This document shows positions 5,051 to 60,556 of a stretch of 64,000 nt of DNA, in pieces; the first letter of the stretch is position 1; every line of letters begins with the position of its first letter. The notes beneath the pieces are model-generated. The model was not told the origin of the DNA. It did no database searches and saw only the letters and a list, made by a program, of their open reading frames with translations. Location: positions 416,839 to 480,838 of IMG/VR virus record IMGVR_UViG_3300028558_000791; one strand, 5' to 3'. A program made the translations under genes and the position numbers.

Positions 5051-5106
5051 CTCGAAACGATAAACGCCGCAAGGCAATCACCGCAACGAACGAAAGAGAG
5101 ACCATC

Positions 5107-5295
5107 ATGGAAAACGTCAAGTTCACCCGCAACGGCGACAAGCTCACCATCGAAGTCGACCTCGCCTACCGTGGGCAGGTGTCCGCCACCGGCAAGACCC
5201 TTCGGGTCGCCAGCACCGAAGGCAACGTCCCCTGCGACGGTTCCCCCGAGATCAAGATCGGTCTCAACATCTTCGCCCCTGTTCCCAAGAAGTAA
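5107..5295 (+). CDS. Small beta-rich hypothetical protein, paralogue of 11486..11662
   Basis: KLTIEVDL...TGKTxRVASTEGN; about 40/58 residues identical to the second copy by hand alignment. Confidence 0.85.
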   Translation: MENVKFTRNGDKLTIEVDLAYRGQVSATGKTLRVASTEGNVPCDGSPEIKIGLNIFAPVPKK

Positions 5296-5366
5296 TTCGC
5301 CTACATCGGCGAGCCCCCTGCAATCCCGATACCAACAGGTACGCAAGGGACAGGGGGCTGACTCTT

Positions 5367-5453
5367 CGCCAGTGCTACACGAAAAACGGGGCGGGACGCC
5401 TCGGCCTTCCAAGGTGGTGTAGCGTAAGGGTTCGATTCCCTGACTGGCGACCC
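5367..5453 (+). ncRNA. tRNA-like element with non-canonical core (degenerate Gly-UCC-like loop)
   Basis: CGCCAGT/ACTGGCG acceptor, AGGG-TTCGATT-CCCT T-arm, CTTCCAA loop in a mismatched stem, extra GCTACAC/GTGTAGC helix. Confidence 0.5.
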
Positions 5454-5500
5454 TGGCTCCCATTCATGAGCCAGTAGATTCCAACATCGGAGGTTCCAAC

Positions 5501-5788
5501 ATGAAGTCACTCGACATGGCAGACAAGTATCCCCCGGCCGAAGACTTCGATGATGAGGACACCACCGTCCGCATGCATGTGCCTACCTTCCTCCCCAAGG
5601 TCATCGTCGAGGATGAGGGTGAGGACGAGTACGACCTCTGGGGAGCTAGGGATACCATCCCCTGCCCACCTCCCTACCCTCATCCCCACATGAAGCGAGA
5701 AGTCAATTGGGGTGCAGTCGGCATCCTTGCCTTCACCATCGTCTTCTGGTGGACCGTCGGCTACATGCTCTACTGCTGGATCTACTGA
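5501..5788 (+). CDS. Acidic protein with C-terminal transmembrane helix
   Basis: GGAGG RBS; hydrophobic C-terminus. Confidence 0.7.
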   Translation: MKSLDMADKYPPAEDFDDEDTTVRMHVPTFLPKVIVEDEGEDEYDLWGARDTIPCPPPYPHPHMKREVNWGAVGILAFTIVFWWTVGYMLYCWIY

Positions 5789-11319: not shown

Positions 11320-11485
11320 GGGGCCTGCGAGTCTGGGTAGAACCAGTAAGGATCCCTTCACGTAAACCTGTAATAGTAACCTAAACCCTTGGCCCGTACC
11401 TATCGAAAGATGGGGCGGGCATAAGGCATTGAAACAACTTGGGAGATGCAATGCTCCCATTCACCAACGCAACGGAGCAATGCAC

Positions 11486-11662
11486 ATGGAAAACGTCAAG
11501 ATGTCGGTCAACGGAACGAAGCTCACCATCGAGGTGGATCTCGCCCATCGTGGTGCGAAGTCCAGCACGGGGAAGACGGTGCGAGTCGCTTCCACCGAGG
11601 GGAACATCGAGTGTCCCGAGAATCCGGCCATCAAGGTTGGCCTGAATATCTTTACGAAGTAA
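11486..11662 (+). CDS. Paralogue of 5107..5295
   Basis: GGAG RBS; shared KLTIEVDL/TGKT/VASTEGN. Confidence 0.85.
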   Translation: MENVKMSVNGTKLTIEVDLAHRGAKSSTGKTVRVASTEGNIECPENPAIKVGLNIFTK

Positions 11663-11723: not shown

Positions 11724-11921
11724 ATGTGCGGCAACAAGCGGGATGCAGTCGAGAACGTCCAGATCAACCTCAACTACATGAAGGAGGACGTCAGCAGCGC
11801 ACTCTCCTACGCCAGTGATGTGGGCGACCCGGAGCTGACCAAGCAGCTCACGGAGCTGAAGGACAAGACCCAGGGCGTCAAGGACTACATCAAGTCCAAG
11901 GCCGACCCCAAGAAGGGCTGA
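11724..11921 (+). CDS. Small helical hypothetical protein
   Basis: 11-mer at 11682; strong codon bias. Confidence 0.7.
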   Translation: MCGNKRDAVENVQINLNYMKEDVSSALSYASDVGDPELTKQLTELKDKTQGVKDYIKSKADPKKG

Positions 11922-11986
11922 AGCACAAGACGGGCATTGGACCGATAGCTATCTAACCATACCTCCCTCTGGCGGTAGCTATCCGA

Positions 11987-12116
11987 GGTCCGAAACAAGG
12001 TAAGTGAAAGTATATAGGTAGGGTCCCTGTCACACTAGCGGTGGTGATGTCAGCCGTCCCGACCATGCGAGTAACTACCTTGTCCCCAGCGTAGGGCGCT
12101 GGGCTGATGAGCCAAC
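11987..12116 (+). ncRNA. Hammerhead ribozyme (type II-like permutation) with large insertion in stem III
   Basis: GAAA 11992-95; stem III ACAAGGTA/TACCTTGT; GUC at 12082-84; stem I CCCAGCG/CGCTGGG; CTGATGAG 12104-11; stem II is non-standard. Confidence 0.7.
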
Positions 12117-12284
12117 CATGAAGTATCTCCTCCCATTCATAGTAGTAGTGATGATAGGTTGCAGGACGGTACTACCCAAGGAAGACTACAGCATAGTCAT
12201 TACCTCTCATGTCTGCGATGTAGACGGAGGTGCGTGTCACAAGGAGACGAAGGTTCTCCCATTCACGGCGGAGGGTTCAAAGTG

Positions 12285-12533
12285 ATGGCAATCGGTACAA
12301 CGCTGACGGTTCAAGGAATCACTTGGGCATCCATGAAGTACAATGGCAAGCTAGCCCTGGGATACAGGAAGCATGCCATCGCTTGGGATTGTGGTAGTGG
12401 CAAGTATCACATCTTGGAAGAGGGTCGCAGTATCTTCTCTGACTCAAGTGTGACTGCCTGCTTGGAGAACGCGGCAGCACTGGTGTGGGACTACTACGCC
12501 AGCAAGATCATTCCCTCTTGGGAAGTGGCATAG
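12285..12533 (+). CDS. Hypothetical protein
   Basis: GGAGG RBS, 11-mer at 12256. Confidence 0.65.
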   Translation: MAIGTTLTVQGITWASMKYNGKLALGYRKHAIAWDCGSGKYHILEEGRSIFSDSSVTACLENAAALVWDYYASKIIPSWEVA

Positions 12534-49840: not shown

Positions 49841-50269
49841 ATGAAGACCCCTGTTACCATAGAAGTTTCTGTAGAGATTGTGGATTGGGATCCCGCTTTT
49901 GTAAAAGAAGGTGCAGTCTCTTTCGCCTCTGAAAAGGAAGCTGCCTTCTTTTGGTTCCGTCGGTCTGACTTCAATAGTCACTGCACCATCTCACAAAACC
50001 CACACACTAAACGATGGGTAATGGTGACAGAGATTTATGTTCCCAAATCCAAAGCAGAAGAGGTTGCTCTTTTTTGGAAAGAGGGTTGGGATACGCAGAG
50101 GGATGCGTATGGCCAAGCATGCTGGGACGAATACTACCGTGGTGTTCGTGATGCAGAACTGAATACAGTTTTTGATCGAGAGGGCTTTGGTGAGAAGATC
50201 ATTCAACGCCTGGCCAAAGCGATGCCTAAGTGGATGTTCGCAAATAAACAGTTGAAGGAAAACAAATGA
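49841..50269 (+). CDS. Hypothetical protein
   Basis: ATGA coupling to the RNA ligase gene. Confidence 0.6.
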   Translation: MKTPVTIEVSVEIVDWDPAFVKEGAVSFASEKEAAFFWFRRSDFNSHCTISQNPHTKRWVMVTEIYVPKSKAEEVALFWKEGWDTQRDAYGQACWDEYYRGVRDAELNTVFDREGFGEKIIQRLAKAMPKWMFANKQLKENK

Positions 50270-51360
50270 AGTTCATGGCATGGCCGGAGATTGAATCGTT
50301 CCACAATATTAGGAAGTTCATCCGTGTTGATCCGGGTGAGTGGTGGCACAAGAAAGAACTTCTTGCCGGCACGAGTGTTGTGTCCTACAAGGCCAAGGTC
50401 AAGCTGCACGGAACCAATGCGGCTGTACGAATTGATTCTAGTGGTAACGTCACGGCTCAAAGCCGAACCAACATCATCACTCCCGAGAATGACAACGCAG
50501 GCTTCGCCCGCTGGGTGAAGGCCAATGAGAATGAGTGGAAGAAGACGGCAGCCGTTCCTACTAAGGATAATCCTGCCGACCACTATCTCAATGTGGTTTA
50601 CTACGGTGAGTGGATTGGCCCTGGCATTCAAAAGAATGTTGCCGTATCTGAGATTCCCAAGAAATGTTTCGCCGTCTTCGCCATGAAAATTCTTGGCAAG
50701 GATGAAGAGGAAGTTCTTTTCGAGGTTGAACCTAAACGTATCGAGATGTATCTCGGCAAGAGTGGAATCAAGTTTGCTTTTTCAGAAGAAGCCAACCTTC
50801 CTGATGTCTATGTTCTTCCCTGGTATGAGCAGTCAATCGACATCGACTGGAAGCAGAACGATGAAGAACTGAGCAAGACCATTGCACCCATCAACGATTG
50901 GGTAATGGCTATCGAAGCCAATGACCCGTGGGTTGAGAAGACCTTTGGCGTCAAGGGAACTGGTGAAGGTTTAGTCTTCTATCCAGCTTCCGTTGCACAT
51001 AAGAACAGCTTCGAGCACTTCACCAACCTTTGCTTCAAGGCTAAAGGAGAGAAGCATAAGAACATTGCTACTGCCAAGCCCGTCCAGGTAAGTGCAGAAG
51101 CGGCTGCCAGCATCGATGCCTTCGTTGCCATGGTCCTCACTGAAGCTCGACTGGAGCAAGGGGCGACTAAGGTTTCTCCAGGTGGTGCACTTACCTATGA
51201 CATGAAGAATACGGGTAAGTTCGTCACATGGGTAAGTGCGGATGTGGAAAAAGAAACTCAGGACGAGTTGGCTGCAAGCAGTCTGACTTGGAAGGAAGTT
51301 CAGAAACCCATCAGTGACAAGGCCCGCTCCTGGTATCTCACTAAGGCTAAGGGATTTTGA
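50266..51360 (+). CDS. RNA ligase, Rnl2-type
   Basis: Motif I KLHGTN, YGEWIG.GIQK, FAVF, GEGLVF, FKAK. Confidence 0.85.
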   Translation: MKFMAWPEIESFHNIRKFIRVDPGEWWHKKELLAGTSVVSYKAKVKLHGTNAAVRIDSSGNVTAQSRTNIITPENDNAGFARWVKANENEWKKTAAVPTKDNPADHYLNVVYYGEWIGPGIQKNVAVSEIPKKCFAVFAMKILGKDEEEVLFEVEPKRIEMYLGKSGIKFAFSEEANLPDVYVLPWYEQSIDIDWKQNDEELSKTIAPINDWVMAIEANDPWVEKTFGVKGTGEGLVFYPASVAHKNSFEHFTNLCFKAKGEKHKNIATAKPVQVSAEAAASIDAFVAMVLTEARLEQGATKVSPGGALTYDMKNTGKFVTWVSADVEKETQDELAASSLTWKEVQKPISDKARSWYLTKAKGF

Positions 51361-60481: not shown

Positions 60482-60556
60482 GGCCCCATCTTCTAGCGGC
60501 TAGGATGCGAGACCTTCACTCTCGTCACACGGGTTCGAGTCCCGTTGGGGTCACCA
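60482..60556 (+). tRNA. tRNA-Glu (anticodon UUC) with encoded CCA
   Basis: GGCCCCA/TGGGGTC acceptor, CGAGA-CCTTCAC-TCTCG, ACGGG-TTCGAGT-CCCGT, ACCA; C at position 33. Confidence 0.85.

What the first reader, a model, noticed from the sequence alone, without database searches (positions are those of the whole stretch)
11929..12120. Hammerhead ribozyme with a 70-nt insertion in stem III and an atypical stem II
Seen: complete core (CUGAUGAG 12104-11, GAAA 11992-95, GUC 12082-84), an 8-bp stem III and a 7-bp stem I. The ends lie at stem II, where only G10.1-C11.1 pairs simply. An upstream hairpin (GGACC/GGTCC, GATAGCTA/TAGCTATC) and a possible pseudoknot (GACGG 11929 with CCGTC 12054) replace the usual stem. 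Established: this core defines hammerheads, which cleave after the NUH triplet. Inference: self-cleavage after 12084 processes the early polycistron or releases a structured RNA, perhaps under conditional control.
Basis: partly seen in the sequence, partly recalled or inferred. Interest (0 to 1): 0.7.

Follow-up and report, generated by a model that had tools for sequence, protein, structure and literature searches.

The report
Four-helix hammerhead ribozyme in jumbo phage
The flagged stretch is a genuine, evolutionarily conserved hammerhead self-cleaving RNA of a 481-kb soil phage, built in an unusual way: the usual second stem is split into a long hairpin plus a short helix that joins the two ends of the RNA.

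Summary
Window 11932-12114 (+ strand, between two small ORFs) carries every conserved hammerhead nucleotide in type II order: GAAA 11992-95, GUC 12082-84, CUGAUGA 12104-10. Stem III has 8 bp and stem I has 7 bp. A descriptor scan finds this one site in the 480,838-bp genome, against 0.05 per shuffled genome.

I found 16 further distinct homologues in related soil and sediment jumbo-phage contigs. All keep the core. In the model-fitted alignment 94% of pair cells pair (33-39% when the partners are slid), and 45 of 58 pairs show compensatory changes. These cover stems I and III, the upstream hairpin and helices inside the stem III insert. 102 G-U cells fix the + strand as the RNA strand.

It is invariant except for one double change (GUGC/GCAC). 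With P0 the RNA is a four-way junction.

Rfam's hammerhead models score below threshold (16-24 bits against 37). I could not test cleavage; no RNA run was listed.

Most likely the RNA cuts itself after C12084, separating the upstream cistron from the p55/p82 mRNA. In most relatives it is the 5' domain of a longer RNA with a tRNA-like end. Verdict: a new structural variant of a known ribozyme class.

The parts
11932..11935 (+). 5' strand of terminal helix P0 (GGGC). C11935-G12111, G11934-C12112 and G11933-C12113 pair; G11932 faces A12114, a mismatch in the window only.
   Evidence: Invariant in 16 of 17 distinct homologues. L067 has GUGC with GCAC, a change on both sides. P0 is predicted in the MFE fold of every homologue taken alone and by RNAalifold.
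11936..11938 (+). Junction linker AUU. It is 1-3 nt in relatives: AA, AU, AC, AAU, AAA, GUU.
11939..11991 (+). Long hairpin abutting GAAA, acting as stem II. Base GGACC/GGUCC, 3-nt bulge CGA at 11984-86, upper stem 11944-53 with 11974-83, CCA/UGG 11957-59 with 11970-72, apical loop UACCUCCCUC at 11960-69.
   Evidence: Covariation: 6 of 8 upper-stem pairs and 3 of 6 base pairs change on both sides. The first G-C pair is invariant. The loop always holds a CCUCC-like run.
11992..11995 (+). Core G12 A13 A14 and A15.1.
   Evidence: Invariant in all homologues. A15.1 pairs with U16.1 in every MFE fold.
11995..12002 (+). Stem III, 5' strand (pairs with 12076-12083).
   Evidence: 7 of 8 pairs show changes on both sides.
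12003..12075 (+). 73-nt extension of stem III with its own helices. It includes a hairpin with the conserved loop UAGCGGUG at 12036-43.
   Evidence: The helices inside the extension covary: helices 8-10 have 14 of 16 pairs with changes on both sides. The length ranges from about 16 nt (L067) to 74 nt (95 in L048, which carries a duplication).
12076..12083 (+). Stem III, 3' strand, ending in G16.2 U16.1.
12084..12085 (+). C17 and the predicted cleavage site (between 12084 and 12085).
   Evidence: GUC is invariant in all homologues. Cleavage itself is inferred from the established hammerhead mechanism and was not tested.
12085..12103 (+). Stem I hairpin: 12085-91 with 12097-12103, loop UAGGG at 12092-96.
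   Evidence: 5 of 7 pairs change on both sides. The loop is U-N-R-G-G in 16 of 17 distinct sequences (UGGUG in L067).
12104..12110 (+). Core C3 U4 G5 A6 U7 G8 A9.
   Evidence: CUGA[U/C]GA in all homologues. Only the free position 7 varies. Unpaired in 13 of the 14 single-sequence MFE folds computed.
12111..12114 (+). 3' strand of P0 (GCC, then A).
   Evidence: GCCC in 15 of 17 homologues, GCAC in L067, GCCA here.
12118..12285 (+). Downstream gene p55 (55 aa, lipoprotein-like signal). Its AUG lies 4 nt after P0 and 33 nt after the predicted new 5' end.
   Evidence: The ORF is conserved at 70-74% identity in L010, L019 and L024. No Pfam or PHROG match.
11724..11921 (+). Upstream gene p65b (65 aa). 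Its stop codon lies 10 nt before P0.
   Evidence: Conserved in L003 and L010. No family match.

Best explanation
Window 11932-12114 encodes, on the + strand, a hammerhead self-cleaving ribozyme of an undescribed four-helix architecture. The block order is that of type II: GAAA block, cleavage-site block, CUGANGA block. The two strands that normally form stem II do not pair with each other along their length. The strand before GAAA is the 3' arm of a long bulged hairpin (11939-91). The strand after CUGAUGA pairs with the far 5' end (P0, GGGC/GCC). The result is a four-way junction of P0, hairpin, stem III and stem I around the canonical core.

I think the hairpin most likely stacks on the core as the working stem II, with its conserved bulge placed to touch loop I, while P0 ties the two ends together.

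Inferred mechanism: during or after transcription of the operon the RNA folds and cuts itself between C12084 and C12085 by the standard hammerhead reaction, giving a 2',3'-cyclic phosphate and a 5'-OH. After the cut the two products are held together only by the 3-bp P0 and tertiary contacts, so they should separate. The upstream p65b message then ends in a large stable structure. The p55/p82 message begins with a 5'-OH and the stem I hairpin, and the 14 nt before the p55 AUG are freed from the ribozyme fold. So the element most likely uncouples the stability and translation of the flanking cistrons.

Shown here: the conserved core, the covarying helices, the strand, the single copy in the genome, and the family in related phages. 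Inferred: cleavage, which helix stacks on the core, and the biological role.
For: Core and stems at the stated coordinates. One descriptor hit in the real genome against 0.05 per shuffle.

A covariance model built from three relatives only finds the window at 73.8 bits, E about 4e-19, over its full length. It finds one copy in the 481-kb genome.

Seventeen distinct homologues: 94% of pair cells pair, against 33-39% with slid partners. 45 of 58 pairs have changes on both sides, and 0 of 500 shuffles reach the observed value on any of the five measures.

Each of the 14 homologues then in hand, folded alone, gives the same P0, hairpin and stem III; 13 also form stem I and leave CUGANGA unpaired (the exception is L048, which carries a duplication). 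The later four give the same junction, apart from stem I in L068. RNAalifold gives the four-way junction independently.

P0 has strictly complementary flanks, with one change on both sides in L067. 102 G-U cells would be mismatches on the other strand.

The base of the hairpin has 4 bp wherever stem I has 6 bp, and 5 bp wherever stem I has 7 bp.

Literature: type II hammerheads with 1-2 bp stem II are active, and phage or prophage hammerheads flank genes and cut polycistronic RNA in vitro and in E. coli (PMC3088659).
Against: No cleavage data: no RNA run was listed, and only two DNA runs hold the sequence.

Rfam hammerhead models stay below their gathering scores. RF02276 gives 16.3 bits against 37 in the window, using a wrong GAAA, and 24.3 bits in the compact relative L067.

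P0 rests on a single covariation event and has only 3 bp in the window. The correlation between stem I length and hairpin-base length may reflect one evolutionary event.

A helix or hairpin interrupting the strand next to the core has no precedent in published hammerhead alignments (PMC10085705), so activity cannot be taken for granted. In sequences whose linker ends in UU, including the window, the MFE fold pairs the linker with G12 and A13, a possibly inactive conformer. The alignments were fitted to the model's structure, which favours it.
Confidence: 0.8

Rival explanations
1. Same ribozyme, but P0 (GGGC/GCCC) is the true, canonical type II stem II (G10.1 = G12111, C11.1 = C11935). The long hairpin is then an accessory domain inserted between C11.1 and G12.
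For: GCCC/GGGC directly following CUGAUGA and preceding GAAA is an ordinary stem II. An unrelated canonical type III hammerhead found by chance in another phage contig has exactly that stem II (L064). G12111 is covalently continuous with A9. P0 is nearly invariant, as the 10.1-11.1 pair is in hammerheads.
Against: The hairpin's last C is directly continuous with G12, with no linker, and its first G-C pair is also invariant. The distance from the core to the hairpin bulge tracks stem I length, which is expected if the hairpin lies beside stem I. P0 has only 3 bp in the window.
Confidence: 0.25
2. Same ribozyme, read: stem II is the single pair G12111-C11991. Above it sits a three-way branch made of the hairpin minus its first pair and P0 minus its first pair.
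For: This is the only reading that keeps both backbone continuities of every known hammerhead (A9 to 10.1 and 11.1 to G12). [quoted passage not shown] It differs from the four-way junction only by migration of one pair.
Against: It leaves G11939 and C11935 unpaired, yet both are invariant in 17 sequences while neighbouring pairs vary. It has one pair fewer, and P0 would be only 2 bp in the window. Thermodynamic folds of every homologue prefer the full four-way junction.
Confidence: 0.2
3. The RNA is a conserved structured element derived from a hammerhead that no longer cuts, or cuts only with a partner. It would serve as a stability, translation or protein-binding element. The conserved CCUCC loop, or the longer RNA in relatives, would be the functional part.
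For: The architecture is unprecedented next to the core. Peripheral loops are conserved more strongly than needed for folding: CCUCC in the hairpin loop and GCGG in the stem III extension. In most relatives it is fused to a roughly 330-nt structured RNA with a tRNA-like end.
Against: Every catalytic nucleotide, the 15.1-16.1 pair, H17 = C and the pairs flanking the core are kept in 17 sequences while almost everything else in the helices changes. That pattern is what selection for catalysis predicts.
Confidence: 0.1
4. Chance resemblance, or a DNA-level element: the two palindromic GATAGCTATC-like arms would be operator sites.
For: Both arms of the hairpin are palindromic in the window. GATAGCTATC occurs 3 times in the genome against 0.46 expected.
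Against: The palindromes are lost in relatives while arm-to-arm pairing is kept through compensatory changes and G-U pairs. ATAGCTAT occurs 8 times against 7.3 expected. Descriptor statistics exclude chance.
Confidence: 0.01

Closest known systems
Type II (GSC) hammerhead ribozymes of bacteria and phages (Rfam RF02276; Perreault et al. 2011, PMC3088659)
   Same: Same catalytic core, same 5'-to-3' order of the GAAA, cleavage-site and CUGANGA blocks, closed stems I and III, RNA ends on the stem II side, and an intergenic position in phage DNA between small genes. Very short stem II (1-2 bp) is known in this type.
   Different: Here the two stem II strands each pair with another partner (hairpin arm, far 5' end), giving a four-way junction. 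The usual pseudoknot of at least 4 bp between loop I and the 3' tail is not available; 2-3 bp at most (my reading of the sequences). Stem III carries a structured extension of about 16-74 nt (95 in one duplicated copy). The Rfam model scores 16-24 bits against a cut-off of 37.
Non-circularly permuted hammerheads, types SGC and CSG (Eckert et al. 2023, PMC10085705)
   Same: Hammerheads whose connectivity departs from the three classic types. They were found in metagenomic data and recognised by a conserved core plus covariation.
   Different: Those keep each of the three blocks intact and change their order. This family keeps the classic GSC order but breaks the rule, stated there for all known alignments, that nothing longer than 1-2 nt separates the core strands from the stem they share.
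Hammerheads flanking genes in prophages and phages (Perreault et al. 2011)
   Same: Position between cistrons of one transcription unit. The proposed role is cutting long phage transcripts into gene-length mRNAs, and cleavage was shown in vitro and in E. coli for some.
   Different: Single copy in a 481-kb genome rather than tandem arrays. In most relatives it is fused to a further structured RNA.
Small ribozymes next to tRNAs in phage genomes (HDV-like 'theta' ribozymes; recalled from memory, not checked here)
   Same: In most relatives of the window, though not in the window itself, the ribozyme lies upstream of a tRNA-like element.
   Different: A different ribozyme class, on the other side of the tRNA. 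The tRNA-like element here is not a recognisable tRNA (22 bits, or 'tRNA-???').

Membership tests
Hammerhead ribozyme class | Conserved core: C3 U4 G5 A6 N7 G8 A9, G12 A13 A14, the A15.1-U16.1 pair, and H17 at the cleavage site. | tested here: met
   Present in the window and invariant in 17 distinct homologues. Only N7 varies, U or C.
Hammerhead ribozyme class | Stems I and III adjoin the core without mispairs and are real helices (covariation). | tested here: met
   Stem I: 5 of 7 pairs change on both sides. Stem III: 7 of 8. 96-98% of cells are paired.
Hammerhead ribozyme class | Stem II is formed by the strands directly 3' of A9 and 5' of G12, closed by G10.1-C11.1. | tested here: inconclusive
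   G12111-C11991 can pair, but 10.2 and 11.2 cannot. Each strand instead pairs elsewhere: hairpin (covarying) and P0 (one covariation). Two invariant G-C pairs compete for the 10.1-11.1 role.
Hammerhead ribozyme class | Site-specific self-cleavage 3' of position 17, giving a 2',3'-cyclic phosphate and a 5'-OH. | not testable with these tools
   No RNA run was listed for this DNA. An in vitro assay is needed.
Hammerhead ribozyme class | Reaches the gathering score of an Rfam hammerhead model (RF00008, RF00163, RF02275-7). | tested here: not met
   No hit at gathering thresholds. RF02276 scores 16.3 bits against 37 in the window and 24.3 bits in L067. There was no hammerhead hit at E <= 1 in five relatives. 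This is an operational criterion; the models cannot span the insertions.
Type II (GSC) hammerhead | 5'-to-3' order is GAAA block, cleavage-site block, CUGANGA block, with stems I and III closed by loops. | tested here: met
Type II (GSC) hammerhead | Pseudoknot of at least 4 bp between loop I and the nucleotides just after stem II. This is a majority feature, not strictly defining. | tested here: not met
   Loop I (U-N-R-G-G) and the 3' tail (CCC or CCA) allow only 2-3 pairs, by inspection of the sequences. The tail pairs with the 5' GGGC instead.
Non-circular hammerhead permutations (SGC, CSG, GCS) | Block order other than CGS, GSC or SCG. | tested here: not met
   The order is GSC (definitions in PMC10085705).

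The most novel reading that the evidence does not exclude
The hammerhead is one module of a composite phage RNA device. A ribozyme core carries, on a stalk of variable length, a conserved mimic of the 3' end of 16S rRNA (CCUCC; UCACCUCCUU in L057 and L065, extended to UCACCUCCUUA in L057). In most relatives it is fused to a tRNA-like domain. On this reading the stalk loop binds Shine-Dalgarno-like sequences or another partner in trans. Self-cleavage would release or switch this activity, rather than merely trimming an mRNA.
Probability: 0.1. Interest if true: 0.85.

Novelty: new variant of a known kind. Interest (0 to 1): 0.6.

Why it matters
Hammerheads are the best-studied small ribozymes, and their natural diversity has been described as permutations of three uninterrupted blocks around a three-way junction. 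This family would be a natural hammerhead built on a four-way junction, with the stem II strands taken over by two different helices. Current Rfam models do not detect it.

If it cuts, it widens the rules used to search for hammerheads, so many may be missed at present. It also offers a natural scaffold in which the RNA ends and a long stalk both emerge next to the core, which is useful for ribozyme engineering. And it adds an RNA-processing element to the little-known accessory regions of soil jumbo phages.

The link with a tRNA-like domain in relatives suggests a punctuation-like processing system that is worth testing.

Tried and rejected
1. **Rfam.** The gathering scan of the whole window gave only a tRNA. 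The permissive scan gave a sub-threshold RF02276 hit that mis-assigns GAAA to 'CGAguAAC'.

2. **Cultured phages.** No DNA relatives in GenBank. Proteins reach at most 43% identity.

3. **Paralogues.** None in the genome by blastn or by covariance model.

4. **Neighbouring proteins as probes in IMG/VR.** p82 and p150 gave nothing. p209 gave two relatives.

5. **Loop-only DNA pattern.** It gave one true and one chance hit. The genome-contig scan gave 11 hits; only one (L039) scored at all with the model, weakly, and none is convincing.

6. **Read evidence.** Only two DNA runs hold the sequence, both identical across the ribozyme. No RNA run was listed.

Rejected.

8. **A second, type III-like fold.** Rfam suggested one in L010, using a downstream GGCGAAAC. 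I rejected it because that GAAA is GAAC, GAUC or GAAG in other relatives, its stem III would have 3-4 bp, and the segment is absent from the window.

9. **Palindromic arms as operators.** Rejected.

10. **Loop I to loop II kissing (GAGG with CCUC).** Considered unlikely, because the upper stalk varies from about 8 to about 19 bp while stem I stays at 6-7 bp.

11. **The CTGATGA with an 8-bp stem on the minus strand near window 29473.** It is only an inverted repeat with C at 10.1. I did not pursue it.

12. **Generic long-stem-III type II pattern in IMG/VR.** It found only an unrelated canonical type III hammerhead.

Full report
**Setting.** The window is the last 64 kb (416839-480838) of a 480,838-bp virus record. 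It is a jumbo phage from a rhizosphere metagenome; two DNA runs hold it. Contig Ga0265326_10000001 (498,445 bp) carries the identical ribozyme locus, about 350 bases compared (L031). The flagged stretch lies between two small + strand ORFs. p65b (11724-11921) and p55 (12118-12285) are both conserved in relatives and have no family assignment. All neighbouring genes run on the + strand.

**Observation.**
- A hammerhead descriptor finds exactly this one site on both strands of the 481-kb genome, against 0.05 hits per dinucleotide-shuffled genome.
- Of 110 CTGATGA sites, only this one is preceded by a compact hairpin.
- Rfam does not report it at curated thresholds. The permissive scan gives Hammerhead_II at 16.3 bits (cut-off 37) with a wrong GAAA, because the model cannot span the 73-nt stem III insert or the upstream hairpin.

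**Homologues.** No cultured phage is close.
- The p209 protein led to two IMG/VR relatives. One of them, L001/L003, carries an 83% identical copy of the hairpin region followed by a full hammerhead with U7 changed to C.
- The other relative (L002) has an HNH-like ORF at the same place and no ribozyme.
- A DNA pattern built on the conserved loop and GAAA found three more copies in metagenome contigs (L010, L019, L024).
- A covariance model built from those three alone (R1) recovers the window at 73.8 bits, E about 4e-19, full length, and L003 at 80.3 bits.
- Seventy-two homologues of the upstream protein p77 gave access to more contigs. Scanning them with R1 raised the family to 17 distinct sequences.
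- The genome holds a single copy.

**Structure.** All 17 sequences keep CUGA[U/C]GA, GAAA, the A15.1-U16.1 pair and GUC.
- On the model-fitted alignment, 94% of pair cells form standard pairs, against 33-39% when partners are slid by 1-3 columns. 45 of 58 pairs show changes on both sides, and no shuffle out of 500 reaches any observed measure (smaller sets).
- By helix, the pairs with changes on both sides are: stem I 5 of 7, stem III 7 of 8, upper hairpin 6 of 8, hairpin base 3 of 6, and helices inside the stem III extension 14 of 16.
- 102 G-U cells would be mismatches on the opposite strand, so the RNA is read from the + strand.
- Caveat: the alignment was fitted to the structure. Independent of any alignment, though, each of the 14 homologues then in hand folds by minimum free energy into the same P0, hairpin and stem III; 13 also form stem I and leave CUGANGA unpaired, the exception being L048, which carries a duplication. 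The four found later give the same junction, apart from stem I in L068. RNAalifold predicted the four-way junction before any model existed.

- The flanks GGGC (11932-35) and GCC(C) (12111-13) are complementary and almost invariant, while the sequence just outside them varies freely. The compact relative L067 has GUGC with GCAC, a compensatory double change. This terminal helix, P0, closes a four-way junction. In order, the strands are: P0; a linker of 1-3 nt; the hairpin; GAA; stem III; C17; stem I; CUGANGA; and P0 again.

**Which helix is stem II.** Three readings differ only by migration of one base pair at the junction.
- (a) The hairpin is stem II (G11939-C11991 as 10.1-11.1), and P0 plus the linker sit between A9 and G10.1.
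- (b) P0 is a canonical type II stem II, and the linker plus hairpin sit between C11.1 and G12.

Both junction G-C pairs are invariant while the next pairs vary. That argues for both being formed, which fits (a) or (b) better than (c).

The hairpin base has 4 bp wherever stem I has 6 bp, and 5 bp wherever stem I has 7 bp, in all 17 sequences. This places the conserved bulge (mostly CGA) two pairs nearer the core than loop I, as expected if the hairpin runs beside stem I and contacts its loop. That favours (a). It may, however, reflect a single evolutionary event.

An unrelated canonical type III hammerhead met by chance has GCCC/GGGC as its stem II (L064), which keeps (b) alive.

In any reading the family breaks a regularity stated for all known hammerhead alignments: no insertion longer than 1-2 nt between the core strands and their stems (PMC10085705). 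Its block order is nevertheless the classic type II order.

**Peripheral elements.**
- The upper hairpin stalk varies from about 8 to about 19 bp, yet its loop always carries a pyrimidine run with CCUCC or a close variant. In L057 and L065 the loop holds UCACCUCCUU (UCACCUCCUUA in L057), which is like the 3' end of 16S rRNA; that comparison is from my own knowledge. The variable stalk length argues against a fixed contact with loop I. Its role is unexplained.
- The stem III extension (about 16 to 74 nt; 95 in L048, which carries a duplication) has covarying helices and a recurrent GCGG-containing loop (UAGCGGUG at 12036-43).

**Function.**
- Established: hammerheads cut 3' of position 17. Type II forms with 1-2 bp stem II are active. 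Phage and prophage hammerheads flank genes and cut long transcripts in vitro and in E. coli (PMC3088659).
- Inferred for this element: cleavage between 12084 and 12085. After the cut only the 3-bp P0 and tertiary contacts hold the two products together, so they should part. The upstream message would keep a bulky structured 3' end with a cyclic phosphate. The p55/p82 message would begin with a 5'-OH and the stem I hairpin, 33 nt before the p55 AUG, and its initiation region would be freed from the ribozyme fold.
- I could not test any of this; no RNA run was listed.

**Relatives differ downstream.** In most homologues the hammerhead is followed by 200-570 nt without a called gene. Seven of them align into a conserved structure of about 330 nt, in which 31 of 55 predicted pairs change on both sides. 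It ends in a tRNA-like domain with an acceptor-like stem and a GGUUCGAnUCC arm. Weak tRNA-type hits support this.

The window and L054 lack this domain, and a gene starts at or within about 40 nt of the end of the modelled ribozyme stretch. So the window holds a 'solo' copy. Its conservation there shows that the hammerhead module is under selection on its own.

**Verdict.** The finding is real and more than chance. It is a hammerhead by core and helices, a new structural variant (four-way junction, split stem II) of a known class, and it defines a small family in soil jumbo phages that current Rfam models miss. Cleavage and biological role still need the bench.

Noticed in passing
L003:1637-1930, L010:1347-1637(-), L019:192-480, L024:610-900(-), L047:1587-1880, L049:3734-4030, L057:3467-3790 (absent from the window): In most relatives a conserved structured RNA of about 330 nt follows the hammerhead; 31 of 55 predicted pairs have compensatory changes. 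It ends in a tRNA-like domain (acceptor-like stem, GGUUCGAnUCC arm, odd anticodon-like arm with a CUAGCUA loop). It matches no Rfam family: tRNA 22 bits, mascRNA-like 21 bits, ARAGORN 'tRNA-???'.
   Followed up: partly
window 11960-11969; same loop in all homologues: The apical loop of the long hairpin always holds CCUCC or a close variant, on a stalk of variable length. In L057 it reads UCACCUCCUUA, like the anti-Shine-Dalgarno end of 16S rRNA. No partner was identified.
   Followed up: partly
whole genome; window = 416839-480838: The last 60 kb or so of the 481-kb genome has 49-55% G+C, against 39-45% elsewhere (window profile). Relatives share genes of this part, so it is probably a distinct module rather than a misassembly. 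IMG/VR labels the record 'provirus', 100% complete.
   Followed up: no
L002:5565-6022: In one relative the place of p65b plus the ribozyme, between the p77 and p82 homologues, is taken by an ORF that looks by eye like an HNH homing endonuclease; I ran no family search on it. The locus appears to be a hotspot for insertions and replacements.
   Followed up: no
L048:927-1123: One homologue has a 21-nt tandem duplication spanning the 3' strand of stem III and the GUC, giving two candidate cleavage sites. It could be real or an assembly artefact.
   Followed up: no
L064:11230-11290 (- strand): An unrelated, canonical type III hammerhead (stem II GCCC/GGGC) sits between a stop codon and the next start codon in IMG/VR contig IMGVR_UViG_3300008261_000142.
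   Followed up: no
whole genome: CTGATGA occurs 81 times on the + strand and 29 times on the - strand, with about 29 expected per strand. This is probably a coding-strand bias, since nearly all genes are on the + strand; only one site is a ribozyme.
   Followed up: partly
window 60482-60556: tRNA-Glu (UUC), the only RNA in the window that Rfam reports at its curated thresholds. An RNA ligase domain gene (PF09414) lies at 50266-51360.
   Followed up: no
window about 5106-5174 and 11485-11553; L002:489-659 and 5355-5564: The small protein p77 (true length about 58 aa) is present in two copies per genome and has 72 homologues in metagenomes. No function is known.
   Followed up: no
window 12139-12148 (inside p55); upstream of the p82 homologues in L003, L054, L059: The motif CUCCCAUUCA lies inside the p55 coding sequence (LPFI). 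In relatives that lack p55 it persists just upstream of the p82 start. It may be a remnant of a deleted p55 or an RNA signal.
   Followed up: no
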